IMG/VR virus record: IMGVR_UViG_3300005613_000001
Span: 463,113-527,112 of that record
Reading direction: 5' to 3' (one strand)
DNA: 64,000 nt
Shown: piece after piece, positions 1-55,813 of the stretch
Layout: the number at the start of each line of letters is the position of its first letter
Position numbering within the stretch: the first letter of the stretch is position 1
The notes under the pieces: model-generated
Seen by the model: the letters and a program-made list of their open reading frames with translations, nothing else
Database searches by the model: none
Told to the model about the DNA's origin: nothing
Made by a program: the position numbers and the translations under genes

Positions 1-6
1 GGGCTG

Positions 7-876: not shown

Positions 877-893
877 ACGTTGCGGAAACCTGG

Positions 894-928
894 AAAGCCG
901 CCTCAATTTTTTGGGGCGGCTTTTTTTT
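894..928. terminator. Bidirectional intrinsic terminator between convergent genes
   Basis: AAAGCCGCC...GGCGGCTTTTTTTT hairpin, A-run on the left and T8 on the right. Confidence 0.85.
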
Positions 929-39800: not shown

Positions 39801-42800
39801 CATAGCTTCATCCCCAGCACCGCCTTTTTTAATGCCAAAGAATCTACTAAACATACTGCCTGTGTCTGCGCCTCCGGTTAATGCTCCTAATATGGAAGAT
39901 TCAACAGCACCGGCTATACCTTCGCCCTTAAACACGCCGGTTGCAGCATCTCTTTCAAGGAAGCCACTAAGAGCACCCAACATATGACTAAGACCAGGAA
40001 TCTTTAAAACTTTTCCCGCACCCTTACCTACAGTGCCAGCGGCTTTACTAAGAGCAGAAACAGGGGCTACCTTTAATGCCTTTATGCCTCTATCAAGTGC
40101 TTTAGCCCCATCAGCAATTTTAGCTGCGGCTGGCGTCATCATCTTCGTCACAACAGGCGGAGAGATGCCCTTAGCCACACCCTTAGCAGTGGTTAATGCT
40201 TTTGCAATTTTACCACTTTCTACAACTGGTTTTGCTCCCCCACCCACCAGCATTCCAGCTTTTCTCATCTGTTCAACTTGTGCTGCTTTTTTGGCTCCTT
40301 CTGCTGCCTTTGTGGCTTTTTCAATTGCTGTCGCCATTTTGCCGGGAGCCTCACCAATAGCTTTTATTGCCTGCGCAACATATGGTGGCGTCACTTGTTT
40401 AACAACTTCTGCTGCCTTGAGACCTTTAATCCATTCTTTTGCCATGCCAGCCTTAGCAATTACATTAGATTTAGCTGCCGCTGCAAACTTTCCCGCTCTG
40501 GTTGCGGGTGGCATTTTAGCTGCCGAGAATGGAACCACAGGAGCTTTTGTAATTCCAAGAGCTTGTGATACGTCTTTTACTGTTTTCCCAAATCTACTAC
40601 CAGCGATAGCCTTGGCTCCTCTTTCTGTCAAAGCTACTGCTCTCCCTAGAACTGGAATTCTCTTAGAGAATTCCAGCATTCTCTTCCCATATTTAATTAA
40701 ATTGGTTGCTCGACTTGCAGTGTAGATGGCAGTAAAAGCTTTCCTGCCATAATTTACCATTTTCGCAAAAATACTAGCAGTTTGTTTGCCCCATTTAGCG
40801 GCCTCATCTGTCAGACCTGTCATAAACTTTCCAACATTACCAAATTCTATTTGTTTGGTATATTGAAGGAATCTAAAGGCATGATCTTTAGCGGCTGCCA
40901 TTCCCACTCTTGCATAATCAGTCATCCTTGATATGTCTTTATTTCTAAACACACCAGCAGCTACGTCGCCAAGAGCAGAAAGATGTTGTTTGCCCTTCAT
41001 AGTAACTGATGTCATAGCCTGGTTGAACATTGGAATTTGTTTAGCCGCAACAAAGTTCATCAAGGCTGGGGAGAAAGGCATTCCGCCCTCTGCCGCAGTT
41101 TTATAATCTCTTGCTGGTTCTGCCATTTGTGCAAAATTCATAGCCGCTATTTCAGGGGCAACGCCGACAACACCACCCTCAGCGAAATGAGGAAGCGAAG
41201 AACCATATCGATCTTTTAAGAATTGCAAAACACCAGCCACACCCTTTGCGGTATAGTCAGCAGGAATAATAAGTTCTCCCCCATGAACAACAGCCGGGAC
41301 AGCCCCGGAACCTGGAACTTTACCACCATCTTCCCAAAGCCAACCACGACCAACTAAAGCCGACCCAAATCCAGCTATACCCTCAGCCGCACCACCTATC
41401 ATCTTGCCTGCGCCAACTACTCTACCCACTGTATGTCCATACAAACCACCTTCTTCACTCCCCGTGACTACATCTGCAAGTCCACCACCCCAACGACCAG
41501 CACCTCTAGCCATTCCCCAACTTTCACCTTCCATACCAGCAGCACCAGCTTGGAAGTTTTTAACCATCTCAGAATTAACTATTGCTTCTTTTGTTTCTTT
41601 CCAAGGACGGGTGATAACACTCCAAAGCCAATCACCTATACCAATTAATGCTTCTGTAATTGTAGTCCATAAGAATGAACCAACTTTCTGTATGGCTTTT
41701 GGAAGAGCCCGGAAAGCCCCTCCAATTGTCTCGAAGATCACCCCAGGCAGTCTAAGGAATACCCCTACTAGCATTTCCCAAATAAATTGCCCAGCACCAT
41801 AAAGTGCCGTTCTTAATCCATCTGTGAACATAGTGCCATCAAGCGTGAAAATGCCTTTTAAGATTTTTCCTATGCCACTAAAGAATTTCATAAGTGCCTT
41901 CACTACAGGCAACACAACTTTCAAGACGCCTTTAACCAAACCGGCAAGTGCTCCAACAATCAATCTAATTGGAACTAAAACAACGCGGATAATCCAACCA
42001 ACAACCCATCCAATTTGTTTTAATACCCAACCAATAGCTTTTCCTACCCCCCCGATTACGGAAGCTAGTGTTTCCACGATACCAATAGCATCTTTGGCTT
42101 TCATCCCAAATCCACCAAAGGCTTTTTGGAAATCCTTAAAGATATCGCCCAGCATTTCCCCAAACTCTTGGAAAGGCTTAAATATCTCTTTTATACCATC
42201 CCATAACCCAATGAATACATTTTTAATAAATCTTCCTATACCCTTAAGAATTCCCCAAAGTATCTTTACGGGTATCATTACTGTTTGTAGTGCCCAAGCA
42301 AGAGGCGGGAAAGCATCAAACAGAAGAGCAAGTTTCTGAGTCAGCCACCCGGTAGGTCCAAGAGCCCCTTTGAATAATCCAAATGTAAGGGTATTCAACA
42401 CTCCGGTCATAAATCCAGCACCCTCAGCGGCCCACTTTTGGTTTAAAGTCAATTCGTCTAACGAAGTATTAAATATATCTGTGGCGTGTTCGGCAGCATG
42501 GAATGCATGTACTATTCCACCTATTGCTCCCGCAACTGCCCCAATGGCAAGTAGCCCTGTAGCTGCGCCGCCACCCAACGCTCCACCAACCATGCCAAGT
42601 CCACCCTTCACACCGACACCACCGGCACTCAAAAGATGAAGCCCTTTACCAATGTTTATCAGCCCACCACTCAATTCCCCGAAGATTGATTTAAACGTTC
42701 CTGTCATGACACCCAGGCCAGCAATTGCAATTCCACCAGCCCCTAACAAGGTGAACATATAATTCATAATTTTCCCTGTGTTTGAAGCAACCAATTCATT

Positions 42801-44837
42801 TGCTTCCATTATGCGGTACTGAATAGATTTAACAGGGTCTAACTTCCTCTCCCTAGCAGTTTCTATTTTTTGCAAGTCTTCATTTAAGGTGCTCATTGCT
42901 TCACGAATTAATGAATCTCTCTTATCCTCCGGGCCTTGTAATGCTTTCTGCATCATTTTAGAAGTAGATTTTATATCAACATCAAATTCATTTCCCATTT
43001 TAGCAACAAGATCAAAACGAGTTTTGTATAGCCCATTTATTTTTTCTTCATGTGATGCACCCGCTAATCCTAATTTGGCAAATGCGCCCGTGCTACGTTC
43101 CATTTCCTGTTGGAATCTTGCCCCACTTCCTGCAAACATCTCTTCTAAGGGGGCTCCTGCAAGATCTAACTTTTCAGCCTTTGTAATTGCAGTGCTATAC
43201 TCATTCAACAATTGACCCGTTTTCTGCAATGTGGTGCTGGCTATCTTTTGCTGATATTGCATATACTCTTGAGTTGTTCTAAAGTTTTGATCTCGTTCAG
43301 TTTCTAATTGCTTCATCCTTTGCTCAAAGCTCATAAAGCCTTCTTCAGTGGCTTTAATTGCCATCTGCATATCACCCAAACCCTTAAATGTCCCTCCTGT
43401 TATTTGTTGTGTTACCTCATTTAAGTATTGCCTGATTTCAAATGGAATATCTTGCAAATCAGCTTCTAGTATGTTGCCCGATAAAGCCTTCCTTATTTCT
43501 TTAGGAGCTAAACTTACAATGTGCTCCATGTGTTTTTTCAAACCACCAACAAATCGCTGCCCAAGTCTAGGATCATGCATTACTTCTGTGGTGAAAACTT
43601 CATGTGCAACTCCGGCAAGTTCACCGGCTCGCATTAAGAACGCTCTAAACCCAGCATCGGCTCGTCTAAAATCACTCAAACTACTGAGTGCTTGTTGTAT
43701 CGAAGAAACCTGTTCTTCAACACCATATTTTTGTGCCGCTGCCGTCATTGCAATCATATTCTTAGCAGCGGTGGTAGATAGGTTTGCTGAGTTTCGAAGA
43801 TTCTTCATGAACTTATCTGAAGCCTGCACAGCTTGCTCTAAATTCTCTCCCGTAACCCCTGTCATCTTGGCTATTTCACCCGTTGCACCACTTAAAACTT
43901 GCAACTCCCCTGTATTTAATCTAAGTTGCATATGCCAATCATGAAATCTTGAGGCGGTTGCGTCTACATTCATTCCTAATTGTTTGGCTGTAAACAACCC
44001 AAGCTGCGTCACCTTCAAGCTTTGCTGTTGGCTCTTAATGCCTTTCTTGAGGTTTTTCATATAGGCTGCTAAGAATTTATGCCTGATGACCCCTGTGTAT
44101 TTAACCTGTTTTCCTATCTCTCTTAATCGCCCCTGAATATTAAACATGGATGAATCAAGTGCATCAGTTTGATATGCAATTTCTCTCATCCCCCGAATGA
44201 ATTTATATTCTTCTACCAATGCTCCTTCAAATATTGATTGAAAAGCAATTGCTGTGCCACCAATTTCTGCAATTCGCCTCATACCGCTCATAAACCCGCG
44301 ACCTAACCTGCCACCTCCCCAATTCCAGCCACCACCTCCTTGACTCCCAACATCAGCGCCACCACCCATACCTGCATTAATTAAATCATCTATATTATCA
44401 ATAACAACGTGCTGGGCGCTTCCGAACACAAAGCGATTATTTTGTTTAACGGTTACATCGAGCAATTTCCTAACTTGCCCCATTAATGAACCTAAATTAT
44501 TAAGAGGCGAAGAAACACTTCCCAAATCGCCACCTAAAGCAGTTTGGAATCCTCTCACCATCTCTCGCATAGACATGCCCATCCCCACATCCTTGAGTTT
44601 GGGGGATCTAGTCTTAGGTTCCCTTTTAGCATCCTTAGCATCACGCCTTTCTTTATAGTCGTCACTTACAGATTTAATAAGTTTTGAGGCACTCTCTAAT
44701 CGATCACCAAAATTATCAGCAAACTTGTCTAAAATTGCCTGCAACTCTTCAGCAACATCAGATTTTTTGACAGTTTCCCCTTGGGCAACTTCTGCTGTCA
44801 TTCCTCTTACTAGATCATCAACTGTAAAATCTGCCAT
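36873..44837 (-). CDS. Tail tape measure protein (2654 aa)
   Basis: Ala/Gly-rich amphipathic repeats, F..D...IKEG units, two H.GE.(I/V)IP motifs; directly upstream of the baseplate genes. Confidence 0.92.
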   Translation of the reverse strand: MADFTVDDLVRGMTAEVAQGETVKKSDVAEELQAILDKFADNFGDRLESASKLIKSVSDDYKERRDAKDAKREPKTRSPKLKDVGMGMSMREMVRGFQTALGGDLGSVSSPLNNLGSLMGQVRKLLDVTVKQNNRFVFGSAQHVVIDNIDDLINAGMGGGADVGSQGGGGWNWGGGRLGRGFMSGMRRIAEIGGTAIAFQSIFEGALVEEYKFIRGMREIAYQTDALDSSMFNIQGRLREIGKQVKYTGVIRHKFLAAYMKNLKKGIKSQQQSLKVTQLGLFTAKQLGMNVDATASRFHDWHMQLRLNTGELQVLSGATGEIAKMTGVTGENLEQAVQASDKFMKNLRNSANLSTTAAKNMIAMTAAAQKYGVEEQVSSIQQALSSLSDFRRADAGFRAFLMRAGELAGVAHEVFTTEVMHDPRLGQRFVGGLKKHMEHIVSLAPKEIRKALSGNILEADLQDIPFEIRQYLNEVTQQITGGTFKGLGDMQMAIKATEEGFMSFEQRMKQLETERDQNFRTTQEYMQYQQKIASTTLQKTGQLLNEYSTAITKAEKLDLAGAPLEEMFAGSGARFQQEMERSTGAFAKLGLAGASHEEKINGLYKTRFDLVAKMGNEFDVDIKSTSKMMQKALQGPEDKRDSLIREAMSTLNEDLQKIETARERKLDPVKSIQYRIMEANELVASNTGKIMNYMFTLLGAGGIAIAGLGVMTGTFKSIFGELSGGLINIGKGLHLLSAGGVGVKGGLGMVGGALGGGAATGLLAIGAVAGAIGGIVHAFHAAEHATDIFNTSLDELTLNQKWAAEGAGFMTGVLNTLTFGLFKGALGPTGWLTQKLALLFDAFPPLAWALQTVMIPVKILWGILKGIGRFIKNVFIGLWDGIKEIFKPFQEFGEMLGDIFKDFQKAFGGFGMKAKDAIGIVETLASVIGGVGKAIGWVLKQIGWVVGWIIRVVLVPIRLIVGALAGLVKGVLKVVLPVVKALMKFFSGIGKILKGIFTLDGTMFTDGLRTALYGAGQFIWEMLVGVFLRLPGVIFETIGGAFRALPKAIQKVGSFLWTTITEALIGIGDWLWSVITRPWKETKEAIVNSEMVKNFQAGAAGMEGESWGMARGAGRWGGGLADVVTGSEEGGLYGHTVGRVVGAGKMIGGAAEGIAGFGSALVGRGWLWEDGGKVPGSGAVPAVVHGGELIIPADYTAKGVAGVLQFLKDRYGSSLPHFAEGGVVGVAPEIAAMNFAQMAEPARDYKTAAEGGMPFSPALMNFVAAKQIPMFNQAMTSVTMKGKQHLSALGDVAAGVFRNKDISRMTDYARVGMAAAKDHAFRFLQYTKQIEFGNVGKFMTGLTDEAAKWGKQTASIFAKMVNYGRKAFTAIYTASRATNLIKYGKRMLEFSKRIPVLGRAVALTERGAKAIAGSRFGKTVKDVSQALGITKAPVVPFSAAKMPPATRAGKFAAAAKSNVIAKAGMAKEWIKGLKAAEVVKQVTPPYVAQAIKAIGEAPGKMATAIEKATKAAEGAKKAAQVEQMRKAGMLVGGGAKPVVESGKIAKALTTAKGVAKGISPPVVTKMMTPAAAKIADGAKALDRGIKALKVAPVSALSKAAGTVGKGAGKVLKIPGLSHMLGALSGFLERDAATGVFKGEGIAGAVESSILGALTGGADTGSMFSRFFGIKKGGAGDEAMGIMGAAGTGAMAGAALGSVVPVIGTGMGAIAGAVSGGVAELYKIMTDAGSPLRKFLMSWAPGIDAIIKPLKYLAEGIKATFSGAWQVIKGLFTLDFKSMGDGLVTMLLAVPKMLYKSVVAIVPAIGKQIIALPKYFAAVILKLPQLLYQAVAGIFTSIGGMADKVTGPIGAILKTILTPFKLIGEIAGGIGGVLGGLFSTVVGLFSFDFETIKEGFGRAIIALPNMVGNVIGMIGKSLIAVVGNVPQFFLNMFGKIFVDLPKYLMNAISSGLESLSKGIFAPIFQPMLDGWNSIKGVIMGIIEPFEATFAMLKGVFSDIKNTLMTVFQPFFGPLLDVKSGLASVSGFFGMLGTALGGIVGAIGWVAKQIGWLIGTVLKPLGTVVGWVASAALVPLQVGIQGLGLAAKFLINTIGVVVKVIVTLLKPAIMGIGKIIGGVVNSIAGFVHILTGILTFDWDKIKEGFKRIWDGFVSLVGGIFTSLGGTIKAVFWEIPKILGGYFLNGLQAVFVDFPIWLGSSLLSGLKATLIDFPIWLGSSLLSGLKATLIDFPIWLGQSLLGGMKSVFLDFPVWLFTSVTQGLANLGTWLWDHTIGALIDAIPAWVKNLFGGAAADASKGYGETAGEQMNTMLTEGPGVMHGLGGMAGGVGDMLKGDLLQGAGKIAGGALETGVGAVTGTAKAAWGGVKAVGSALNPFNWFKEGSREITKTGLGVLHEGEAVIPNEALKGIKAEGDGPFRGVLDGVTGFIGKSFKNITNMAMNPLETVKKVGGFLGGAFDKIKGAAINFATNPMDTIKGLGETAKGFVSKSYETLKTVGGRLIDDPLGVMGGLTEAGGKLLSGDFTGAAATATTALMGEAAPVATTALPEVHDEIKKEQAGGEPTTTKVAGEELSEMVTHLKKNVDLLTAMNAHLIEMVSIMGEGSEIIPYEDNSMGDASPGSSKPIAPAKYPALNVGLAAASPGRQGRFGQSTRPY
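38084..38272. repeat. 57-bp (19-aa) tandem repeat within the tape measure
   Basis: GCCAAATTGGGAAATCAA at 38141, 38198, 38255; encodes FPIWLGSSLLSGLKATLID. Confidence 0.92.
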
Positions 44838-45491: not shown

Positions 45492-46001
45492 TTAGTTTGT
45501 TGTTGTTCCGTGGGTCCATCCTTGGACCTGATTGGCGTAATCCGTGCCAGTAGTTCGTACTGTGACTCTACCGAGTGGGTCACCAGATTTATCAAATTCT
45601 GATTGTTTCAATTCGTTTTCGGCTTCTGCACTTTTTTGAAAAAACCTGTTTAATTCTTCAACAATAGATTTTATTACTGCTTTACCGGCTTTTTCTTGAT
45701 TTTTGGTATCTGTCATATAATCGGAGAACATGTCCTCTATATCTAGGGGGTATGCTTTACCGAACGGATGTGTTTTTTCTTCTCTTTGAATACGATAAGC
45801 TAGAGAGTCTGCGATTTTATAGATTCTTACACCATCAAATGAGGTTCTGCCATCGGGGCATTTCAGGAACAAATGAGGCTCTTCATCTTCACGGTGGTCG
45901 CCAACAATTTGATTATTTTTTTCTAGTATTTTTTTAACAATACCAAGTTGTTTCTTAGCTTCTCTTGACTTTTTATCAATAAATTCATTAAATGTATTCA
46001 T
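45492..46001 (-). CDS. Hypothetical protein with capsid-targeting-like N-terminus
   Basis: MNTFNEFIDKK. Confidence 0.65.
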   Translation of the reverse strand: MNTFNEFIDKKSREAKKQLGIVKKILEKNNQIVGDHREDEEPHLFLKCPDGRTSFDGVRIYKIADSLAYRIQREEKTHPFGKAYPLDIEDMFSDYMTDTKNQEKAGKAVIKSIVEELNRFFQKSAEAENELKQSEFDKSGDPLGRVTVRTTGTDYANQVQGWTHGTTTN

Positions 46002-46204
46002 TAGAATTGTGGCTCCACTTCATCTCCGCATTGAGTACACCAAAAACGATTGCCTTTTCTGAGAATTCTGCCATCGTGTCTGCATTTGTACACGCTAACA
46101 CCTAAACCAGAACCTACACGGGCGGCTCCCTGTTCCCGTTCTTTTCTTCGGTCGGGATCTCTCGTTCTGAAATCTACTTCCGCTAACCATTGTTTAAATT
46201 TCAT
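46001..46204 (-). CDS. Small zinc-ribbon protein with capsid-targeting-like N-terminus
   Basis: MKFKQWLAE; CRHD...CTQC. Confidence 0.65.
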   Translation of the reverse strand: MKFKQWLAEVDFRTRDPDRRKEREQGAARVGSGLGVSVYKCRHDGRILRKGNRFWCTQCGDEVEPQF

Positions 46205-46464
46205 TAGTGGTGATCCCCTTCAACCTTTTTCAACTTTGTATAGTATTTAGGGTCTTCTCTAAGATGAGCCACAGCAATTTTCATAATTGTTCCCTTGTCA
46301 TGACCAGGAACTACATCTGTGTCTTTGCCCATCTTATCGTCGTGTTCCTTTTCTACTTCCATGCCCATCGCCAACTCTTTCATATTTACGCCTTTAATAT
46401 CTACTTTTGCTGTTTTGGCGATTTGTTCTAAACTATTTGATTCAAAAAACTGTTTAAAATTCAT
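46204..46464 (-). CDS. DUF5661-like protein
   Basis: LAMG.EVE.EH...KIA.AHL.EDP.YYTKL; MNFKQFFE start. Confidence 0.75.
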   Translation of the reverse strand: MNFKQFFESNSLEQIAKTAKVDIKGVNMKELAMGMEVEKEHDDKMGKDTDVVPGHDKGTIMKIAVAHLREDPKYYTKLKKVEGDHH

Positions 46465-48296: not shown

Positions 48297-48662
48297 ATGG
48301 CTGACTTTGAAAATCAAGTTTCTGAATCTATCCGATCCCTGTATGAATTAACCTCTCGTATCGATGAGAGAGTAAAGAATATGGGTAGTTCACTATCTAC
48401 AACGGATGGTAAAATAGAAAAAGATCGCCAAAGTCAAACTGAATTACTACAGAGAATAGCAGCGCTGGAAAGTAAAAATGGGGCGGGGGCTCAAATTAAA
48501 GAATTGGGCGACCGGCTGCGAAAACTAGAGTTGCAAGTTGGAGCCGTAGAAATTATATCTACCGGAAATCAAAGCAAATGGGCGCTGATGACCGATGCAT
48601 TTATGAAAATCGCTGTCATCCTCGCAGCATCCATCCTTATTTGGAAATTGGGTATAAATTAA
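48297..48662 (+). CDS. Coiled-coil protein with C-terminal TM anchor (XhlA/holin-like architecture)
   Basis: Heptads followed by FMKIAVILAASILIWKLG. Confidence 0.65.
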   Translation: MADFENQVSESIRSLYELTSRIDERVKNMGSSLSTTDGKIEKDRQSQTELLQRIAALESKNGAGAQIKELGDRLRKLELQVGAVEIISTGNQSKWALMTDAFMKIAVILAASILIWKLGIN

Positions 48663-48663: not shown

Positions 48664-50283
48664 ATGAGAACATTTAAAGAATACGTTTCATTAAAAGAGG
48701 CGGCTGGAAAAGAGTCAAGCGGGGAGAATATTGTTGCCAAAAATACCACTATCTTAGGTAAAGATGAAGAAGGCGTTGAACCCTTCATGGTTGGCGCACA
48801 ATATAACCGGAAAAACCTTGGCACACTTGTTAAAGCATTTCTTGCCAGCCCCGAAGTAGAATTTGGTCCCAATATGCTTGATAGCAAAGCCACGACAAAC
48901 CCAGGGCAAAGCACAAGCGGTTTGACCAAAAACAAGCTAAAAAAGAAGACCTTGTATCTCGTTGGAGGGGCAGTAAGAGATCACATGTTGGGCCAAACCC
49001 CCAGTGATTATGACTTGGCTACCGATGCTACAATGGATGAAATCCGCCTCATTTTAAAACATGCTGGATTTGCAGAACTTAGACCACAAACTGCGGTGGA
49101 TAAGAAAAAAGAGGATAAAAAGCCTGATCCAAAATACGACAATCTCCCCGCTGCTTCTGATAATCCGAAAAAGTTCTATGTAAAAGGCACAGACATTAAA
49201 GGCACAGAATTCGTCATGGGAGCTAAAATTCATGGCGAAGAATTTGAAATTGCCACCTTTAGAAAAGATTCCAAAGGGGAAAGCGACGGTAGAACAACTC
49301 GTATGAGCTTCACACCCAAGCTTGAAGAGGACGCTGCAAGGCGTGATTTTACAGTCAATTCAATGTATATCCCACTAACAAGTGAGAATGGCCCAAATAA
49401 TAAATTAATTGATATTTATGGTGGGGTGAGAGACTTAAAACGCAAAAAAGTAAGATTCGTAGGCGATCCAAAAGAAAGATTAGAAGAAGATGAATTGCGG
49501 GCTCTTCGTTATGCTAGATTTGCCTCAATTTTTGAAGATTTGGACATGCCAGATGATATTGTAGATGCCATCGGACAAATGGCTGGACTTAAATCTCTAC
49601 AACCGTTCACTGATAAAGCAGGAAGGCAAAGAGATAGAAGAAAAAGAATTCGTGATGAATTCTTAAAAACAATGAAGAAGGCAAGTGTTAATCCTAAAAA
49701 ATACTTGATGGCGTTAAAAAGACTAGGATTAATACCAGCTATATTCCCTAATTTAAAAATTAGATTAGATGGGCCTGATGATATAAGCGATAAAAGAGAA
49801 AAACATTTAGCTATCGCCTGGTTGCTTAAAGACAATGATCCAGCTAGTGTTTATAGTATACTTACAGATGCACACTGGACTCAAGATGAAGCAAAGCGAA
49901 TTAGTTTTCTAATTAAATTCCTTCACTTCCACCCAGAAATTGATCCTGATAACCTCAACCAAATGTCTTCTGCTTTTATGAAAAGTGGCTTATCAAGTGG
50001 TTACCTCGGCGGAAAAGAAATGGGACAAAAATCACTACTTTCAACTTGGGCTCAAATGAATCCTGATAGATTCCCCGAAGGCTCTGTTGATGCTTTCTTG
50101 AAACACGTTAGCCACGGCCCAATTAAAGTATCCCATGAAGATCCAATGTTCGCTGATTTGTTCGTAGTTGATCCCTTCAGCGGCAAAAGGCGTGGAACAC
50201 CAGGCATTGCACAAAGACAAGCAGAATTGGCACATAAGAGATTTTTAGATATCTTTAAAAGCGGCCAAGCAAAAAATGTATGA
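48664..50283 (+). CDS. cca: Class II CCA-adding tRNA nucleotidyltransferase
   Basis: LYLVGGAVRD...DYDLAT, EIATFR, DAARRDFTVN, D..GG..DL, EDELRALRYARF; no HD domain; no poly(A)-polymerase G(R/K)(R/K)F signature. Confidence 0.9.
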   Translation: MRTFKEYVSLKEAAGKESSGENIVAKNTTILGKDEEGVEPFMVGAQYNRKNLGTLVKAFLASPEVEFGPNMLDSKATTNPGQSTSGLTKNKLKKKTLYLVGGAVRDHMLGQTPSDYDLATDATMDEIRLILKHAGFAELRPQTAVDKKKEDKKPDPKYDNLPAASDNPKKFYVKGTDIKGTEFVMGAKIHGEEFEIATFRKDSKGESDGRTTRMSFTPKLEEDAARRDFTVNSMYIPLTSENGPNNKLIDIYGGVRDLKRKKVRFVGDPKERLEEDELRALRYARFASIFEDLDMPDDIVDAIGQMAGLKSLQPFTDKAGRQRDRRKRIRDEFLKTMKKASVNPKKYLMALKRLGLIPAIFPNLKIRLDGPDDISDKREKHLAIAWLLKDNDPASVYSILTDAHWTQDEAKRISFLIKFLHFHPEIDPDNLNQMSSAFMKSGLSSGYLGGKEMGQKSLLSTWAQMNPDRFPEGSVDAFLKHVSHGPIKVSHEDPMFADLFVVDPFSGKRRGTPGIAQRQAELAHKRFLDIFKSGQAKNV

Positions 50284-51019
50284 ACTTAATGTCTTAACTT
50301 GTAGACCTGATTACTTTTATATCACCCTGGCATCTTTGTTGTCTTCCGATTGGACCGATGATATTAATATATGCCTGGGTGTGGCAAATGGAAGATATAT
50401 TACACAATACCTGCAAGAAGGTAGAATTAAATTAAGAAGATTACATACTAAAAAATCTTATGCTGAAATTAAAGAATGGTTGAAACAAAGACAAGCCTCT
50501 TGGAATTTCTCTAAAATATTAAGAGGCGCTAATAGAAATAAAAGGGGCATCTTTGTTCTTGAAGATGATATAATTCTAAATCCCGATTGGTTCGCACACG
50601 CACATGAAGTAATAAATGAAATAGAAAAAATATCAGATAAGTTCATTCTGTCCATATATAGCCCACATAGGAAAATGGAAGTGGGTGAAAACGGTTTCGC
50701 AGAATACCCAATTGATAGGTTCTTTGGCACGCAAGGGATGTATTACACTCCTTCTGTTGCAATTAAATTGGGGCGGTTCCTACGCGATGGTAATTACCAG
50801 CCAGGACATGATGTGATGATGCATGATTTTTGCAAAGATGAGAAAATAAAAGTGTATGTTCCAAACCGCATAACAATTCAACATATTGGTGAGAAATCAG
50901 CATTTCATGGCACCACGCTCAAAAAAGGACAAGGACCAGTACCCGGTTACTTGTGGCCGACAACTTACGAAATGCCACACTTCCACACTTCAAAGAAATA
51001 CAAGCATCAAAATCTCTAA
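50276..51019 (+). CDS. GT-A fold glycosyltransferase (GT25/GT2-like)
   Basis: IFVLEDDIIL, FGTQGMYY, D.MM, IQHIG. Confidence 0.7.
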   Translation: MYELNVLTCRPDYFYITLASLLSSDWTDDINICLGVANGRYITQYLQEGRIKLRRLHTKKSYAEIKEWLKQRQASWNFSKILRGANRNKRGIFVLEDDIILNPDWFAHAHEVINEIEKISDKFILSIYSPHRKMEVGENGFAEYPIDRFFGTQGMYYTPSVAIKLGRFLRDGNYQPGHDVMMHDFCKDEKIKVYVPNRITIQHIGEKSAFHGTTLKKGQGPVPGYLWPTTYEMPHFHTSKKYKHQNL

Positions 51020-51022
51020 TCG

Positions 51023-51063
51023 AAAAGAAAGACCCCTTATCGTTGTTTCCAACAATAAGGGGT
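51023..51063 (-). terminator. Intrinsic terminator ending the ncRNA transcript
   Basis: ACCCCTTATTGTTG-GAAA-CAACGATAAGGGGT then CTTTCTTTT on the minus strand. Confidence 0.88.
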
Positions 51064-52045
51064 ATTCCCAGCAAGCACGTTCAGGATTCAGCACTCGTTA
51101 GAATAACTAAACCCTCCATTGAGTTCCATCACCTTTTGCCAGTCTCCGCAGGTAGTGCTTACCTTGAGGCTTTTAACCTCACCGCACGCAATTGGTATAA
51201 CCTACGGCGTGATAGTTGTGGGTAGTTTACCTGTTACTTGAACTTTCCGTGCTTCTGATGATTAAATTCCAACATGCTGCTGTTACCACAGTTTAGCTGG
51301 GCCTAATCTCAGGGTGTCACTTGAGCCCTTATAACGGCTCTACTCCTCAACTTCCCATTTTGTTTCGTGGTTGGATTCCACGTCGTTTCTGAATGCCATT
51401 AGGTTGGCATTAGGCTCAACGTTGCTATACAGCCCGACGACTGTGCCCGATATTCTCGGGGGATTTGCTCACAAGCAACTGGCTGCTTGTGGTCTATCCC
51501 GCAACGTGCTAGGGTGTCAGTAAATCCTCAGTTTATCGGCACCAAGCGATCACTTGGCTCCGTATCCGACTGAAGATGCTGATGTTGGGCTGACTTTGTT
51601 CCTTGTCACATTTCTGCGCACAAGGTTTATGTGCCAATCCCACCCTCTAGACGCTTACCACGTTAAATTCGCCTGACTGACAGTTCAGACAAAACCTAAT
51701 ATGGTTGGAAGAGAGACCTACAAATTAATGCTGGGTAGCTGTCAACAACCCGTCTCTAATCCACGCCTCGCATCGAAGCCTGCCTGTGAGTATCCGGTTT
51801 GAATTCTCAGACTTTGCCGTTTCGGCGCTGTCTGTTTCATCATTCCGTGACTTCAAGCTAAAAGGCTCTTTAGAATACCCGTCCGAAGACAAGCTCCCTT
51901 GGATACCTCCGCCTGAGAGTCCCCACCCCTTTTTATGCGGATTGGGGTTTTGTACCCGTGGTCCTATTTTTCAAGAGCCATCGGGTTCCACAGGACTCCT
52001 TGAGGCCACTTACACTTTACAGTATAAGTGCGGAACTCAGTACCA
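51064..52045 (-). ncRNA. ~1-kb highly structured non-coding RNA (GOLLD/ROOL-class candidate)
   Basis: No credible minus-strand ORF; dense hairpins with GNRA/UUCG loops; long-range TGAGTTCC (52039-52032)/GGAACTCA (51127-51120) closing helix; boxA upstream, terminator downstream. Confidence 0.8.
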
Positions 52046-52048
52046 AAT

Positions 52049-52060
52049 TGTCAAAGATCA
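52049..52060 (-). promoter_or_regulatory. boxA antitermination element
   Basis: TGATCTTTGACA vs rrn boxA TGCTCTTTAACA. Confidence 0.75.
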
Positions 52061-52063
52061 AAG

Positions 52064-52235
52064 TGAACAGAGCAGGGCTTGCACCTGCATTTCCTGGTTT
52101 ATCTAGTAGTTAAACTAAATTCCCAAGCGTTCTACAAAATTGATACACCTGTTGGGGTGTCCTCTAATCTCAACTTACCGGAGGCAGTGATAAAATTAGA
52201 GGCGAGATCAACTCCGTTAATTGAACTATCTGTTC
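52064..52235 (-). ncRNA. tRNA-like RNA B (172 nt) with 90-nt D-loop domain and extended anticodon arm
   Basis: GAACAGA/TCTGTTC acceptor, U8A9, GTTC/GAAC D-stem, CTTGG/CCAGG stem, AAAT, GCAGG-TGCAAGC-CCTGC T-arm, A73. Confidence 0.8.
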
Positions 52236-52236
52236 A

Positions 52237-52368
52237 GGCGAACAGGGCAGGATTCTCACCTGCATTTCCGGTAGCGGTGCTTTGGACAACGCTTCCAGCG
52301 TTTTGCACTATTCACTTGACACTGCCGGATGGCCGAGCAACTAATTAGTGCAGTTAAACTACCTGTTC
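52237..52368 (-). ncRNA. tRNA-like RNA A (130 nt plus encoded CC) with 52-nt D-loop domain and extended anticodon arm
   Basis: GAACAGG/CCTGTTC acceptor, U8A9, GTTT/AAAC D-stem, CTGG/CCGG stem, AAAT, GCAGG-TGAGAAT-CCTGC T-arm, G73-C-C. Confidence 0.8.
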
Positions 52369-52380
52369 TTGTGTTTCGTT

Positions 52381-52512
52381 CCCAGCATTTTAACAAATCA
52401 TTTGGCTGTGTCAAGCCCAATTTTTTGTCCGGTCTGCTGAGTAACCTTTGCCTTCTTCTCTGTTCTGTGCCCAGCATTTTAACAAATCATTTGGCTGTGT
52501 CAAGCCCAATTT
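52381..52512 (-). promoter_or_regulatory. Tandem duplicated sigma70 promoters (43-bp exact direct repeat, 89-bp period)
   Basis: Each copy TTGACA-N16-TAAAAT with extended -10 TG; -35 at 52503-52498 and 52414-52409. Confidence 0.88.
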
Positions 52513-52529
52513 GTTCGGACTGCTGGTGA

Positions 52530-52835
52530 CCTTTTGCTAAATTTTTCTCAATTCACTTATCAACCGTAGTTGATGCATTGTGATTGCGAATGGCTTTAGC
52601 TGCCTGGGTTCCCTCCACATGATTGACAACTTTTCCGAAGAGGTTGTCACAGTTTTTTTTCAGGGCTCCTCTTGTACTCCGTTGCCACACGGGCGGGTTC
52701 CCAAATCTCTCAAGGTGGCTTTATGATAACGACTTCTCCTCTTCTGTCAAGGGCAGAAGTTTGGGGATCGCTGCCTCTCTCCCTAGAGGCAGCAATTCCC
52801 CAGGAGCGTTAAAGGCTTCCATCGCCACCGATTGT
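52530..52835 (-). ncRNA. Second structured ncRNA candidate (~300 nt)
   Basis: GGTGGC/GCCACC enclosing helix, 16-bp GGGGA..CCTCT/AGAGG..TCCCC hairpin, cUUCGg and cUACGg loops; preceded by boxA. Confidence 0.6.
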
Positions 52836-52836
52836 G

Positions 52837-52864
52837 TTTTCAAAGAACGTTTGCCCCGAAGGAC
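52837..52864 (-). promoter_or_regulatory. boxB-like hairpin plus boxA
   Basis: GTCC-TTCG-GGGC hairpin followed by CGTTCTTTGAAAA. Confidence 0.7.
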
Positions 52865-52908
52865 GAGAGCCAAGTATAGCGGTTTGCCAAATCCATGCAA
52901 CCCCAATT

Positions 52909-55164
52909 TCACCGCTTGGAGGACTTTTTCTTGGAGAAGCGTAGCTTTTTAAATTTTCTACGCATATTGTCTTTTTTGTCTATCTCACCAGGAGGGTCGG
53001 AGTCACCGCATTGTCCCCTAAATGCCCCGCTTCCATCACCACTAGAAGAAAATGTATTCAGATCACCGTCTTCCCAAAAGCGGTTTTCTCCAAGACTACC
53101 GAGGAACTCACTATGATGTTTCCGAATATCAGCAGCATCTTTGGAACTAATTATACCTAATTTCTGTTGAAAGTCTATCCAATCACTAAGGGCTTCGCCT
53201 CCCCATGATATTCTTTCAAACCCGCTTAGTTTATTAAGAGGTTTAAACCGTACTGCTTTATCAATATGGTCTAACTTTTCTTCTCCTGGGTAGTTAATTT
53301 GGAAGAATTTTTTAGCCCTACGAATATTTGGTACAAATGCCTGGCCGTAAGATTTCCTGTCAGGAAGCTCATCTGATTCCATTGCATCGTGAAGATGCTT
53401 AAGCCTTCTTAAGAATTCGGACATATACACTTTCATGTCGGCATCTTGCATTGCTTGATCGTAAAACCTTTTAAGTATTTGACGATTATTCAAGGATGGT
53501 TTTTCTTTTGTTAATTTTCGCCAAGAATAAACTAAGTGTATTGCATGTGTTGTCTGTCTTATTGCTCTTTTTTCCCAATCTTCACGCTTTGAATCTACTG
53601 CCGCCTCTATTACTTCAAGCGTTTTCCTTAGAGTTGTTTCCAAAGAATGTTTTGTCATTTCCTCTGTGGTGCCTCTAATTGAAGAGCGATTTTTATAACC
53701 GGATGATCTACCATAGGAAACTATACTGTGAGCGCCTCTGTCTTCATCCCAATAATCAGCTTCATCTTTTAGATTGTTAAACCAATCATTGAATTCCCCG
53801 GTTAATTCAACCGAATCACTTATATCAAAATCTTGAGGAAGTCCTTTCCGTTTCCTCCACTCCGCCTTTAGGAAACTTTTCCACAAATTCATATCCCAAA
53901 GATATTCATTAGAAACTTTATATTGTCTTCTAAATTGATCTGCTAATTGGGCATATTTCAAACTAGGTCGTCCTTCAACTTGTTTATGTGTAGGATTTTC
54001 AAAGTTTGGAACTGTTGCAACGTGTTCCCAAGTACCAGGCGTAAGAAAAACAGCTTGCGTTGGCTCAGACGCATAAATAGTATCCGTCCCTATATCAGAG
54101 ATCCCAGAGACTCCCATTTTTCTTAGAATAGCTGACCACGTAATCCACGGGCGAGTATCACTAAGTTTGTCTGACCATCGTTTTGCCACCTGATAGAGAA
54201 CACCTATATCTGAATTGAAGCTATTTGATTTCACCCATTCTTTTGTTTTCTCAAAATCAACCTCAGGATGTTTTTCAGCAAATTTTTTCAACACATCCTC
54301 AAAAGGAATTCTACCCTGTTTACCCCTTTTGATTAATCTTTTTACATGCGTCCAATATTCTTTAAGTGTCTTGTTTATAAAGCGTATTGATTTTTCGCCA
54401 AGATTTTCTTCAATATCTAAATACTCACTGTTTTTCAAAATATCCCAAAAACCATCAACAAGCTCGTCCCAATTCACCTTTTTTATATCTCTAATAGAAC
54501 CAGACAAAGTAAGACTTTTATAAAGTGACTGCTGTAATGAATCTAGTGCTCTTGCTATCACTTGATACCATTGAACTTCATCCCTGGGTTCTCCAAAAAA
54601 CTCCTCAAGGTCTTCATTTTCTATTTTCCACACTTTCTGTAAGTGCTTAGAGATAACCATTCTATACTGATTTAACAAATACAAAGGATCTCGCCCGGCA
54701 TTGATAGACGAAGTTTGCATCATCTTGCCTTTATCATTCTTCTTCTTTGTTATTAAGACTTGAATCCAAGGCTTAGCAGAGGCAAACAAATCATCTGGGT
54801 TATCTCTCATCATTTTGATTGCATAACGAATTGGATATGCATAAAGACCTATAGGCGTCTCTGTCCATGTTGTCTTGGGATTAATGCCTAATTTTTCAAG
54901 ATCAGTGAAACTAACCCATATTTCCTTGGGATGTACACCTTTAGTTTTTAAAGCTTTTTTAATAAACTCTAAATGTGTTATTCTTTCATCATAACGATAT
55001 GTCCGCCCCGTTTTTGGATTGATAAGAGGGTGTTTCACATGGGCGGGAACTATCTTCTTTTGACCTTCTAAGATAGACTCAATGAGCATCTCCATCTCCG
55101 TGTTGTGGAGATCAAGTAAAATGTCCTCACATTCGGAGGTTATTAAATACTCAGAGAACTTCAT
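52909..55164 (-). CDS. Large probable virion internal protein (start reassigned to MKFSEYL)
   Basis: ATG at 55164 preceded by TATAAATA; capsid-targeting-like start; KLGINP..TP.G.Y.YP and GVSGISD.G...EPTQAVF motifs. Confidence 0.7.
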   Translation of the reverse strand: MKFSEYLITSECEDILLDLHNTEMEMLIESILEGQKKIVPAHVKHPLINPKTGRTYRYDERITHLEFIKKALKTKGVHPKEIWVSFTDLEKLGINPKTTWTETPIGLYAYPIRYAIKMMRDNPDDLFASAKPWIQVLITKKKNDKGKMMQTSSINAGRDPLYLLNQYRMVISKHLQKVWKIENEDLEEFFGEPRDEVQWYQVIARALDSLQQSLYKSLTLSGSIRDIKKVNWDELVDGFWDILKNSEYLDIEENLGEKSIRFINKTLKEYWTHVKRLIKRGKQGRIPFEDVLKKFAEKHPEVDFEKTKEWVKSNSFNSDIGVLYQVAKRWSDKLSDTRPWITWSAILRKMGVSGISDIGTDTIYASEPTQAVFLTPGTWEHVATVPNFENPTHKQVEGRPSLKYAQLADQFRRQYKVSNEYLWDMNLWKSFLKAEWRKRKGLPQDFDISDSVELTGEFNDWFNNLKDEADYWDEDRGAHSIVSYGRSSGYKNRSSIRGTTEEMTKHSLETTLRKTLEVIEAAVDSKREDWEKRAIRQTTHAIHLVYSWRKLTKEKPSLNNRQILKRFYDQAMQDADMKVYMSEFLRRLKHLHDAMESDELPDRKSYGQAFVPNIRRAKKFFQINYPGEEKLDHIDKAVRFKPLNKLSGFERISWGGEALSDWIDFQQKLGIISSKDAADIRKHHSEFLGSLGENRFWEDGDLNTFSSSGDGSGAFRGQCGDSDPPGEIDKKDNMRRKFKKLRFSKKKSSKR

Positions 55165-55169
55165 AAAAA

Positions 55170-55177
55170 TATTTATA
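55170..55177 (-). promoter_or_regulatory. T4-type late promoter motif
   Basis: Exact TATAAATA 5 nt upstream of the ATG at 55164. Confidence 0.5.
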
Positions 55178-55309
55178 GTTTGGCACTCAATTTGCGTCCA
55201 AATTAACTTAATTAAATTAGCTGTCAATATGGCAGCTAGAAGCCTAGACCTTGTAGGATGGGCTAACTGGACGTAGTTACGACAGTTTTTATAGAAAGAG
55301 AGGTATAGT

Positions 55310-55813
55310 ATGTTACGTCGCAATCGTCATGGGCATGGACACGGTAGATGCCGAAATGATTTTCTTTTCCCAATTGAAACGCAACTCAATAAGCTTTTTG
55401 ACCAATTCTTTGAAAGTGATGGTTTAAAAGATTCTGTCAAATCAACTCAGGGATATCCAAAAATGGATGTTATTGAAGATGATAATTGTTTGCAATTCAA
55501 ATTGGCGGTTCCTGGTGTGAAGTTAGATGATCTTCAAATTGAAGTTGAGGACTTTTTGGACAGGGTATCGCCCCATAGAATTTTAACAATCTCGGGTAAA
55601 ATGTCGGAAGAGTACGCTTCAAAAGATGATGCTGTATTCCACATCAGAGAACTAAGACACTCCCAATTCCAGAGAGTGCTTCAAATTCCTGATCTTGTAG
55701 AAGGAGAACCTGAAGCTGAACTTCATGATGGCATTTTGGTTCTCAAATGGAAAATCAAAAAGGAAGAATTGCCTCCTACAAAGAAAGCAATTCCAATTAA
55801 AACTACTGAATAA
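55310..55813 (+). CDS. hsp20: Small heat-shock protein Hsp20
   Basis: YPKMDV.E......VPGV...DL.I.....L.ISG...ELR.S.F.R....P.....A.L.DGIL.L. Confidence 0.95.
   Translation: MLRRNRHGHGHGRCRNDFLFPIETQLNKLFDQFFESDGLKDSVKSTQGYPKMDVIEDDNCLQFKLAVPGVKLDDLQIEVEDFLDRVSPHRILTISGKMSEEYASKDDAVFHIRELRHSQFQRVLQIPDLVEGEPEAELHDGILVLKWKIKKEELPPTKKAIPIKTTE

What the first reader, a model, noticed from the sequence alone, without database searches (positions are those of the whole stretch)
48664..50283. CCA-adding enzyme with a T4-like capsid-targeting N-terminus, beside tRNA-like RNAs lacking complete CCA ends
Seen: it starts MRTFKEYVSLKE, has all class II NTase motifs plus a charged insertion, and ends about 0.75 kb from the ncRNA locus terminator (about 1.8 kb from tRNA-like B); those RNAs encode only G-C-C or A-C after the acceptor stem. 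Established: T4 internal proteins carry MKT(F/Y)xEF capsid-targeting leaders cleaved after Glu by the prohead protease. Inference: the enzyme may be packaged and injected to mature the phage tRNA mimics or to repair tRNA ends cut by host defences right after infection.
Basis: partly seen in the sequence, partly recalled or inferred. Interest (0 to 1): 0.7.

Follow-up and report, generated by a model that had tools for sequence, protein, structure and literature searches.

The report
CCA enzyme with capsid-targeting leader
A giant bacteriophage's only tRNA-tail-building (CCA-adding) enzyme begins with the same short tag that phage T4 uses to load proteins into its capsid, which suggests, but does not prove, that the enzyme travels in the virus particle and enters the cell with the DNA.

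Summary
The ORF at 48664-50283 (+, 539 aa) is real. It is a full-length class II tRNA nucleotidyltransferase and the only such gene in a 527-kb phage genome. That genome has 59 tRNA genes, and none encodes CCA.

The N-terminus MRTFKEYVSLKE is not a chance resemblance. In 101 aligned homologues (32-78% identity, from huge-phage contigs), F4 is invariant, F/Y7 occurs in 100/101, and an L-(K/R)-E site follows. T4 ipI starts MKTFKEF, and ipII/ipIII start MKTYQEFIAE. In T4, residues 4 and 7 direct targeting and residues 8 and 10 direct cleavage.

The same leader heads about 20 unrelated small proteins in this genome and at least 11 in a 595-kb relative. It is absent from phiKZ, Atu_ph07 and another huge phage. 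The genome encodes a T4 gp21-type protease, a gp23-type capsid protein and a gp22-like acidic protein between them.

Packaging and cleavage remain inferred. The proposed special link to the neighbouring tRNA-like RNAs is weak. Those RNAs are sub-threshold tRNA mimics found only in the nearest relative, and the obvious substrates are the phage's own CCA-less tRNAs.

By-products: a clade-wide N73-C74-U75 signature at tRNA gene ends, and a ~970-nt structured RNA of no known family that appears in metatranscriptomes.

The parts
48664..50283 (+). Gene for a 539-aa class II tRNA nucleotidyltransferase (CCA-adding type). It is the only PolyA_pol-family gene in the 527-kb genome.
48664..48699 (+). Leader, residues 1-12 (MRTFKEYVSLKE). 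It is a T4 CTS-like propeptide with aromatic residues at 4 and 7 and an L-K-E site ending at Glu12.
48700..48738 (+). Low-complexity linker, residues 13-25. Residues 16-23 have pLDDT <50 in the model, and the length varies between homologues.
48739..48939 (+). Family-specific structured N-terminal extension, residues 26-92. pLDDT rises from ~69 (residues 21-30) to 96-98 (residues 41-70) and is ~80 for residues 71-90. Other phage and cellular CCA enzymes lack it.
48964..49014 (+). Motif A, GGAVRD...DYD (residues 101-117), carrying the catalytic carboxylates.
49075..49215 (+). Charged insertion in the head domain, residues 138-184.
49258..49293 (+). Basic/acidic motif and flexible-loop region, FRKDSKGESDGR (residues 199-210).
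49339..49359 (+). Motif B, RRDFTVN (residues 226-232).
49486..49521 (+). Motif D, EDELRALRYARF (residues 275-286), the nucleotide-templating EDxxR.
48297..48662 (+). Upstream 121-aa gene (coiled coil plus C-terminal hydrophobic helix). Its stop codon lies 1 nt before the CCA start. This gene pair is conserved in relatives.
50276..51019 (+). Downstream 247-aa gene overlapping the CCA stop codon, with no family match. It is conserved only in the closest relative.
45492..46464 (-). Three consecutive small genes with leader-like starts (MNTFNEF.., MKFKQWL.., MNFKQFF..), inside the structural gene block.
51032..51063 (.). 14-bp hairpin, with a T-run on the minus strand, that ends the ncRNA operon. 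It lies just past the stop of the convergent plus-strand CCA operon (51019).
51071..52040 (-). Discrete ~970-nt structured RNA of no known family, recovered as whole contigs from metatranscriptomes.
52063..52154 (-). tRNA-like element A: an acceptor-like stem plus a T-arm-like hairpin, ending ..A-C then T.
52237..52313 (-). tRNA-like element B, with the same T-arm-like hairpin, ending ..G-C-C then T.
52387..52750 (-). Three near-consensus sigma-70-type promoters (52750-52723, 52503-52476, 52414-52387; the last two lie in a tandem repeat). All face the tRNA-like elements and the 970-nt RNA.

Best explanation
The gene encodes the phage's own class II tRNA nucleotidyltransferase. Its everyday job is to complete the 3' ends of the 59 phage tRNAs. 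All of those genes stop at discriminator-C74 and are followed by T, so at least C75 and A76 must be added after trimming.

The first 12 residues form a T4-type capsid-targeting propeptide. The proposed route follows T4 internal proteins and Alt:
1. The leader, through the aromatic residues at positions 4 and 7, binds the scaffolding core of the assembling prohead.
2. The gp21-family prohead protease cuts after Glu12 at the L-K-E site.
3. The mature enzyme stays in the head and enters the next cell with the DNA.
4. There it can finish or repair tRNA 3' ends before any phage protein is made.

Uncleaved precursor in the cytoplasm would do the same job during the rest of the cycle.

Shown: the enzyme family and fold, the conservation and modularity of the leader, the T4-type head genes, and the CCA-less tRNA genes.
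Inferred: prohead targeting, cleavage, injection and early action.
For: Enzyme:
- Pfam, PHROG, PDB sequence and fold matches, and all class II motifs.
- It is the single PolyA_pol-family gene in the genome.

Substrates:
- 59 tRNA genes, none with CCA; C74 in 57/59 and T75 in 58/59.
- The same pattern in the 595-kb relative LR756511: 51/55 and 53/55.

Leader:
- More than 100 homologues start with M-(R/K)-(K/R)-(S/T)-F-x-(E/D)-(F/Y)-h-x-L-(K/R)-E. F4 is invariant and F/Y7 is 100/101.
- Codons differ between homologues.
- T4 ipI begins MKTFKEF and ipII/ipIII begin MKTYQEFIAE.
- In T4, residues 4 and 7 carry targeting and residues 8 and 10 carry processing (PMC9026906; PMC8442874).

Modularity:
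- About 20 otherwise unrelated proteins in this genome carry the leader. With leaders trimmed there is no BLASTP similarity between them.
- All 11 pattern hits in LR756511 are ORF starts.
- A second protein family keeps the leader across 47-77% identity.

Specificity of a strict DNA pattern for the leader:
- T4: 5 hits, 3 of them the proven CTS genes.
- This genome: 9. LR756511: 13. Atu_ph07: 1 weak hit. LR745206: 0. phiKZ: 0.
- Reversed-pattern controls: 0-1.

Machinery:
- Peptidase_S77 protease (92.8 bits), 31% identical to T4 gp21 including the N-terminal LLVE/LLIE site.
- Gp23-family capsid protein, 278 bits.
- T4-like gene order of portal, protease, acidic 311-aa protein (24 [LIVM]xE sites, 27% D+E), capsid protein.

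Model and context:
- The leader is a helix (residues 4-14) followed by a disordered stretch (16-23) before the folded body.
- The gene adjoins the structural block, in conserved synteny.
Against: - There is no direct evidence of packaging or cleavage. The phage is uncultured and no virion proteome exists.
- The protease-leader co-fold gave no answer.
- The leader sits on the phage's only copy of the enzyme. It must also work in the cytoplasm, so a purely virion role is impossible.
- T4 gp61.1, a small early protein not known to be packaged, also starts MKTFKEF. The motif alone is therefore not proof.
- Atu_ph07 has a gp21-family protease but no such leaders, and its CCA enzyme lacks any extension.
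- F4 is as invariant as the catalytic residues, which could also mean the helix is part of the enzyme.
- NCBIfam cannot separate CCA-adding from PcnB-type poly(A) polymerase; all scores fall far below the cut-offs.
- RNA runs show no contigs on this gene.
Confidence: 0.5

Rival explanations
1. This is an ordinary cytoplasmic phage CCA-adding enzyme. The N-terminal helix is a working part of this enzyme family, for example docking on the extra N-terminal domain or on tRNA. Its likeness to the T4 leader is convergent.
For: - F4 and F/Y7 are conserved as strongly as the catalytic residues.
- The family also has a structured 65-residue N-terminal extension and a conserved insertion that other CCA enzymes lack.
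- It is the only copy of the enzyme, so it must act in the cytoplasm.
- CCA-adding enzymes are already known in huge and jumbo phages as translation or repair genes (PMC7162821; PMC7824862).
Against: - The same leader heads about 20 unrelated, mostly tiny proteins in this genome and at least 11 in a relative. None of these can share an enzyme-specific role.
- A disordered, length-variable linker separates the leader from the fold.
- The L-(K/R)-E site two residues after the hydrophobic position mirrors T4's processing determinants.
Confidence: 0.27
2. The leader is a shared tag for something other than the capsid. Candidates are recognition by a phage chaperone or unfoldase, co-translational assembly, another compartment, or regulated turnover. 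The CCA enzyme would be one client among many.
For: - The leader is modular and clade-specific.
- A relative's locus carries Clp_N/AAA genes near the CCA gene.
- T4 gp61.1 shows the motif on a protein not known to be in heads.
Against: - The only experimentally defined function of this exact motif is capsid targeting in T4.
- This genome has the matching T4-type protease, capsid protein and scaffold-like protein.
- The conserved Glu-terminated site fits a protease that cuts after Glu.
Confidence: 0.13
3. One reading: the enzyme is dedicated to the neighbouring ncRNA operon, maturing tRNA-like RNAs A and B that carry incomplete CCA ends.
For: - A and B end in N-C-T and N-C-C-T, the same signature as the phage's true tRNA genes. 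The T-arm-like stem shows one compensatory change in each element in the nearest relative.
- Class II CCA enzymes accept acceptor/T-arm minihelices (established knowledge).
- The operon has near-consensus host-type promoters, so it could be transcribed immediately after injection.
Against: - A and B fail default ARAGORN and the Rfam tRNA model.
- The ncRNA locus was found only in this lineage and one close relative.
- Three more distant CCA loci have other downstream neighbours.
- 59 genuine CCA-less tRNAs already explain the enzyme.
- The compensatory change is the same in A and B. That could reflect copy correction between the two repeats rather than independent events.
Confidence: 0.07
4. 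The protein is a poly(A) polymerase (PcnB-like) or an A-only adding enzyme rather than a full CCA-adding enzyme.
For: - The top NCBIfam hit is the PcnB subfamily (112 bits), just above a CCA equivalog (109 bits). Both are far below their cut-offs.
- E. coli PAP structures are among the matches.
Against: - The best sequence and fold matches are CCA-adding enzymes: human mitochondrial, Planococcus and Bacillus.
- The flexible-loop region is present.
- The genome's tRNA genes lack C75 and A76, so both C- and A-addition are needed.
Confidence: 0.1

Closest known systems
Phage T4 internal proteins IPI, IPII, IPIII and their capsid targeting sequence (CTS)
   Same: - A 10-19-residue N-terminal leader starting M-K-T-(F/Y)-x-E-F.
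- Aromatic residues at positions 4 and 7.
- A hydrophobic-x-Glu processing site.
- The leader is shared by otherwise unrelated proteins.
- The genome encodes a gp21-family protease and a gp23-family capsid protein.

   Different: - The cargo here is a 60-kDa RNA-processing enzyme conserved across more than 100 lineages, not a small, fast-evolving anti-restriction protein.
- The cleavage site is L-(K/R)-E at residues 10-12 rather than I-A-E at 8-10.
- Packaging is untested.
T4 Alt (packaged ADP-ribosyltransferase), and the virion RNA polymerase and ejection proteins of phiKZ/SPN3US-type giant phages
   Same: These are enzymes carried in the head, processed by a Glu-specific prohead protease and delivered with the DNA to act before phage gene expression.
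   Different: - They act on host RNA polymerase or transcribe early genes. No packaged enzyme of the translation apparatus is described in the papers read.
- phiKZ-type propeptides are long and unlike this leader. phiKZ has no match to the leader pattern.
Class II CCA-adding enzymes (human mitochondrial TRNT1, Planococcus halocryophilus and Bacillus stearothermophilus CCA enzymes)
   Same: Head-neck-body-tail fold, motifs A, B and D, and the basic/acidic loop region.
   Different: - About 90 extra N-terminal residues: leader, linker and a small structured domain.
- A 47-residue insertion in the head domain.
- Only 20-24% identity over the fold.
CCA-adding enzymes of other large phages (Atu_ph07, XacN1, Brevundimonas and roseophages, mycobacteriophages)
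   Same: A phage-encoded tRNA nucleotidyltransferase in genomes with many tRNA genes. It has been interpreted as tRNA maturation or repair.
   Different: - They align only from residue ~100 onward.
- The Atu_ph07 enzyme starts 22 residues before motif A and has no leader.
- The XacN1 enzyme was not reported among virion proteins.
T4 tRNA region with the stable RNAs rnaC and rnaD; the large phage ncRNAs GOLLD and ROOL
   Same: Stable non-coding RNAs of unknown function lying next to tRNA or tRNA-like genes in a phage (for T4). That GOLLD and ROOL lie near tRNAs is from my own knowledge.
   Different: The 970-nt RNA here matches no Rfam family, GOLLD and ROOL included. Its relation to them is untested.

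Membership tests
Class II tRNA nucleotidyltransferase (CCA-adding enzyme) | PolyA_pol head domain with motif A (GGxVRD...DxD) | tested here: met
   Pfam PF01743 at 3e-28. Motif A lies at residues 101-117. G101, G102, R105 and D106 are invariant and D117 is nearly invariant in 101 homologues.
Class II tRNA nucleotidyltransferase (CCA-adding enzyme) | Motif B (RRD) and motif D (EDxxR nucleotide template) | tested here: met
   RRDFTVN at 226-232 and EDELRALRYARF at 275-286, aligned to the human enzyme.
Class II tRNA nucleotidyltransferase (CCA-adding enzyme) | Full head-neck-body-tail architecture | tested here: met
   AlphaFold2 model with mean pLDDT 92. The top 46 Foldseek matches are all class II nucleotidyltransferases, and the best are CCA-adding enzymes (E 3e-14).
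Class II tRNA nucleotidyltransferase (CCA-adding enzyme) | Ordered C, C, A addition, as opposed to poly(A), A-only or CC-only | tested here: inconclusive
   - NCBIfam PcnB and CCA models score alike and far below their cut-offs.
- PDB sequence and fold ranks favour CCA enzymes.
- The context of 59 tRNA genes lacking C75-A76 argues for CCA or CA addition.
- An enzyme assay is needed.
T4-type CTS (capsid-targeting propeptide) proteins | N-terminal M-K-T-(F/Y)-x-E-(F) leader with aromatic residues at positions 4 and 7 | tested here: met
   MRTFKEY here. T4 ipI is MKTFKEF and ipII/ipIII are MKTYQEF. Family conservation is given. The T4 mutational determinants are in PMC9026906.
T4-type CTS (capsid-targeting propeptide) proteins | Hydrophobic-x-Glu processing site within 10-20 residues of the start | tested here: met
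   L10-K11-E12 here. Across the family, L/I/F is 81/101, K/R 88/101 and E 85/101.
T4-type CTS (capsid-targeting propeptide) proteins | The leader is shared by unrelated proteins of the same phage | tested here: met
   - 29/765 gene starts against 17/2087 internal Met positions carry it.
- There is no similarity between carriers once leaders are trimmed.
- 9 strict pattern hits here and 13 in LR756511, against 0-1 for the reversed control.

T4-type CTS (capsid-targeting propeptide) proteins | A gp21-family prohead protease and a T4-type head module in the same genome | tested here: met
   - Peptidase_S77 at 92.8 bits, 31% identical to T4 gp21.
- Gp23-family capsid protein at 278 bits.
- Portal protein.
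- An acidic 311-aa protein at the gp22 position. It has no sequence similarity to gp22, so the scaffold assignment rests on position and composition only.

T4-type CTS (capsid-targeting propeptide) proteins | Physical incorporation into proheads and removal of the leader by the protease | not testable with these tools
   The phage is uncultured. The co-fold of protease and leader returned 'no answer'.
tRNA (for the neighbouring RNAs A and B) | Cloverleaf recognised by a tRNA detector or covariance model | tested here: not met
   ARAGORN at default settings finds 0 in the window. Rfam tRNA gives no hit at E<5. The elements are found only with ARAGORN -ps80. The T-loops read TGCAAGC and TGAGAAT, so they lack the usual T-T-C.
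tRNA (for the neighbouring RNAs A and B) | Acceptor stem stacked on a T-arm (minihelix), the part that CCA enzymes recognise | tested here: inconclusive
   A 5-bp hairpin with a 7-nt loop plus a 6-7-bp acceptor-like stem. There is one compensatory pair in each T-stem compared with the single relative. Acceptor pairing of B is only partly kept in that relative.

The most novel reading that the evidence does not exclude
A whole clade of huge phages delivers a tRNA 3'-end-building enzyme inside the virion, as part of a private tRNA system.

In this reading, every phage tRNA gene (and the tRNA-like RNAs) is deliberately cut short at N73-C74 followed by U. The phage's translation apparatus then becomes functional only through the phage's own, pre-loaded CCA/CA-adding enzyme. 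That enzyme would also rebuild tRNA tails removed or blocked by host defences, such as the tail-cleaving Cas12a3 (PMC12851939).
Probability: 0.15. Interest if true: 0.85.

Novelty: new variant of a known kind. Interest (0 to 1): 0.63.

Why it matters
Proteins known to be carried in phage heads block restriction, modify or replace RNA polymerase, or help DNA entry. None of the papers read here describes a packaged enzyme of the translation apparatus.

If this enzyme is packaged, huge phages would start an infection with their own tRNA-finishing and tRNA-repair activity already in place. Three observations make that plausible:
- Their roughly 60 tRNA genes all lack CCA.
- Hosts are now known to attack tRNA tails.
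- The authors of that defence study wrote that viral countermeasures are unknown.

The work also shows that the T4 capsid-targeting leader, used as an engineering tool, exists almost unchanged in uncultured 500-600-kb phages. There it marks about 10-25 proteins per genome. This gives a sequence-only way to predict the injected proteome of phages that cannot be grown.

The clade-wide N73-C74-U75 rule at tRNA gene ends points to an unusual, testable 3'-processing pathway.

Tried and rejected
- Co-folding the gp21-like protease with residues 1-30 of the enzyme gave score 0.00, 'no answer'. It is not evidence either way.
- I laid metatranscriptome contigs on a 5.8-kb phage tRNA cluster to look for non-templated CA/CCA. 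No contigs were laid. None were laid on the CCA gene or on tRNA-like A/B either. Contigs cannot show absence.
- Pfam and PHROG scans of 20+ leader-bearing proteins gave almost no families. There was one weak GNAT match. The PrkA kinase hit is a false positive because its start is part of the PrkA domain.
- I sought a late-promoter signal shared by leader-bearing and head genes. Two upstream motif classes (CTATATA-type and CTAAATA-type) are enriched near start codons, but I could not tie either to timing. I dropped this.
- I looked for a second, leaderless copy of the enzyme, as with virion and non-virion RNA polymerases. There is none.
- Exact-pattern scans for relatives of the ncRNA locus in viral, metagenome and genome collections found only the window's own sequence and one close relative. 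I did not build a covariance model of A/B.
- Rfam at gathering and at E<5 gives no family for the 1.9-kb non-coding region. The two hits (DLEU2_6, ncr1241) are chance-level. ARAGORN's permuted-tmRNA calls at relaxed thresholds were judged to be noise.
- BLASTP of the 311-aa acidic protein against T4 gp22 shows no similarity. The scaffold assignment therefore rests on position and composition only.
Full report
**Where the window lies.** The window is the last 64 kb of a single-contig 527,112-bp virus genome with 40.8% G+C. In the GenBank phage collection its nearest relative by this gene is the uncultured 595-kb phage LR756511. Their CCA enzymes are 43% identical over residues 3-481.

**The gene.**
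- ORF 48664-50283 (+) is 539 aa and starts MRTFKEYVSLKE.
- It matches the Pfam PolyA_pol head domain (3e-28) and PHROG 2244, tRNA nucleotidyltransferase (1e-42).
- By sequence its best solved relatives are the human mitochondrial and Planococcus CCA-adding enzymes (about 1e-24). E. coli poly(A) polymerase (1e-18) and the Bacillus CCA enzyme follow.
- All class II motifs are present: motif A at residues 101-117, the basic/acidic loop region at 199-210, motif B at 226-232 and motif D at 275-286.
- An AlphaFold2 model built on 101 homologues has mean pLDDT 92. Its 46 significant PDB fold matches are all class II nucleotidyltransferases, with CCA-adding enzymes first.
- NCBIfam cannot separate CCA-adding from PcnB-type enzymes, because every model scores far below its cut-off.
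- Compared with the human enzyme, two regions are unmatched: about 90 N-terminal residues and a 47-residue charged insertion (138-184). Both are conserved in the family.
- It is the only PolyA_pol-family gene in the genome.

- The genome has 59 tRNA genes, all on the minus strand between 55 and 321 kb. They include two suppressor-type anticodons.
- None encodes CCA. After the discriminator, 57/59 have C and 58/59 then have T.
- LR756511 shows the same rule in 51/55 and 53/55 of its tRNA genes.
- Every phage tRNA therefore needs at least C75 and A76 added. That alone explains a phage CCA-adding enzyme. Such enzymes are already listed for huge and jumbo phages (PMC7162821; PMC7824862).

**The leader is conserved.**
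- Of 120 listed homologues (32-78% identity, many on contigs of 300-670 kb), nearly all begin with the same motif.
- In the 101-sequence alignment, F4 is invariant, position 7 is F/Y in 100, position 10 is L/I/F in 81, position 11 is K/R in 88 and position 12 is E in 85. A gap-rich, variable linker follows.
- The codons differ between homologues, so selection acts on the peptide.
- In the model, residues 4-14 form a helix and residues 16-23 are disordered. A confidently folded extra domain follows at about residues 26-92.

**Comparison with T4, read directly from its genome.**
- ipII and ipIII begin MKTYQEFIAE, followed by A. ipI begins MKTFKEF and continues to ..ITE followed by A.
- The literature states that the first 10 residues of IPIII suffice for packaging. 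Residues 4 and 7 carry targeting and residues 8 and 10 carry processing, and foreign proteins fused to the leader are packaged and cut (PMC9026906; PMC8442874; PMC3012670).
- The huge-phage leader keeps exactly these features: aromatic residues at 4 and 7, then a hydrophobic-x-Glu site.

**Modularity and specificity of the leader.**
- With a crude set of 765 genes, 29 starts fit M-x(1-3)-[FYW]-x-[EDQ]-[FYW], against 17 of 2087 internal Met positions (p = 2e-7).
- With a following [LIVMFA]xE the counts are 17 against 2 (p = 2e-8).
- A profile built from the orthologues' leaders gives 8 gene starts against 1 internal site at 10 bits or more.
- Apart from one false positive (PrkA) and a weak GNAT match, the carriers are small proteins with no family. 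They show no similarity to each other once the leader is removed.
- Three of them lie in this window, inside the structural block (45492-46464).
- In LR756511, 11 strict pattern hits are all ORF starts, for example MKTFKEFAALKE and MKTFIDWLKVKE.
- A slightly wider DNA pattern was run on six genomes:

| Genome | Hits | Note |
|---|---|---|
| T4 | 5 | ipI, ipII, ipIII, gp61.1 and one weak hit |
| This genome | 9 | |
| LR756511 | 13 | |
| Atu_ph07 | 1 | weak |
| LR745206 | 0 | |
| phiKZ | 0 | |

- Reversed-pattern controls gave 0-1 hits in each genome.
- A second leader-bearing family (350 aa) keeps the leader in four of five homologues.

**The matching machinery is present.**
- At 416-434 kb the genome has, in T4 order, a portal protein, a gp21-family protease, an acidic 311-aa protein and a gp23-family major capsid protein.
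- The protease is 31% identical to T4 gp21 (8e-25). The match includes the N-terminal LLVE, aligned with T4's LLIE.
- The 311-aa protein has no sequence similarity to gp22. It does share gp22's position, acidity (27% against 22% D+E) and density of [LIVM]xE sites (24 against 21).

**Context of the gene.**
- The arrangement [437 aa, minus][160 aa, minus] then [~120 aa, plus][CCA, plus] adjoins the tail/baseplate block. It is conserved in three relatives' loci. The genes downstream are not conserved.

**The neighbouring RNAs.**
- The 1.9-kb non-coding, G+C-richer stretch (51020-52900) is a minus-strand operon.
- It has three near-consensus sigma-70-type promoters and then two sub-threshold tRNA-like elements (B at 52313-52237, A at 52154-52063). 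After 22 nt comes a large RNA, then a 14-bp terminator.
- A and B end in A-C-T and G-C-C-T. In the one relative that has the locus, each T-arm-like stem carries one compensatory change.
- They fail default tRNA detection.
- The locus is absent next to the CCA gene in the three more distant loci.
A and B could still be substrates, like any acceptor/T-arm minihelix.

**By-product: a 970-nt RNA.**
- Nineteen runs, 18 labelled RNA, from about ten studies hold part of the region.
- Laid contigs define a discrete RNA: a 970-nt contig equals 51071-52040 with one mismatch. A 972-nt variant (~97% identity) has different terminal letters. More distant variants have two internal segments replaced.
- The minus strand folds far better than shuffles (z = -7.7, against -2.3 for the plus strand).
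- It matches no Rfam family.

**Verdict.**
- The enzyme assignment is secure at family level.
- The capsid-targeting reading is the best-supported explanation of the leader, at roughly even odds. It rests on homology of a short signal plus the matching machinery, not on any physical evidence.
- The dedicated-to-tRNA-mimics reading is unlikely.

Noticed in passing
window 51071-52040 (minus strand): A discrete ~970-nt highly structured RNA (MFE z = -7.7), recovered as whole contigs from metatranscriptomes of several environments. Variants at 90-97% identity have different termini or replaced internal segments. It matches no Rfam family. It lies downstream of two tRNA-like elements and three strong host-type promoters, and upstream of a strong terminator.
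   Followed up: partly
whole genome G000, 55-321 kb (outside the window), and LR756511 loci L046-L075: Every tRNA gene lacks CCA. Almost all read discriminator-C74-T75: 57/59 and 58/59 here, 51/55 and 53/55 in the 595-kb relative. This is a clade-wide 3'-end rule, which suggests a specific processing step before C/A addition.
   Followed up: partly
G000 167265-167425 and 118940-119023, 158908-158994: Adjacent tRNA genes carry anticodons CTA and TTA (amber and ochre suppressor types). Two tRNA-like genes have eight-base anticodon loops. The window's long ORFs read normally in code 11.
   Followed up: no
window 52382-52425 and 52471-52514: A tandem ~44-bp repeat. Each copy carries a TTGACA-16-TAAAAT promoter with an extended TG, facing the ncRNA operon on the minus strand.
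   Followed up: partly
T4 genome NC_000866 18966-19130 (locus L083): T4 gp61.1, a 54-aa early protein of unknown function, starts with the same 21 nucleotides as ipI (MKTFKEF). Either it is an unrecognised packaged protein, or the motif is not exclusive to head proteins.
   Followed up: partly
G000 425196-426131 (L031 9197-10132, minus): A 311-aa protein sits between the protease and major capsid genes. It is 27% Asp+Glu and has 24 [LIVM]xE sites. By position and composition it is a scaffold candidate analogous to T4 gp22, without sequence similarity.
   Followed up: partly
G000 307842-308213 (locus L017): A 123-aa protein with weak GNAT acetyltransferase matches also starts with a leader-like MQFRQWLEE. 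Besides the CCA enzyme, it is the only leader-bearing protein with an enzyme-like domain.
   Followed up: no
genome-wide, upstream of start codons: Two short motifs are strongly enriched within 45 nt upstream of gene starts: CTATATA/TATATA(A/G) and (C/T)TAAATA(A/G). They often lie only 7-14 nt from the ATG. They may be phage promoter classes giving near-leaderless mRNAs.
   Followed up: partly
window 1-1000: The first kilobase has 55.6% G+C against about 40% elsewhere. It holds a 289-aa GTG-start ORF at 7-876.
   Followed up: no
window 36873-44837 (minus): A 2654-aa protein with long Gly/Ala-rich and hydrophobic repeat segments (tape-measure-like). It lies next to small genes with leader-like starts. 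Its homologue in a relative is only about 1320 aa.
   Followed up: no
window 52909-55323 (minus): The listed 804-aa ORF has a TTG start. An internal Met 53 codons in (near 55164) gives MKFSEYLITSE, another leader-like start and probably the true one.
   Followed up: no
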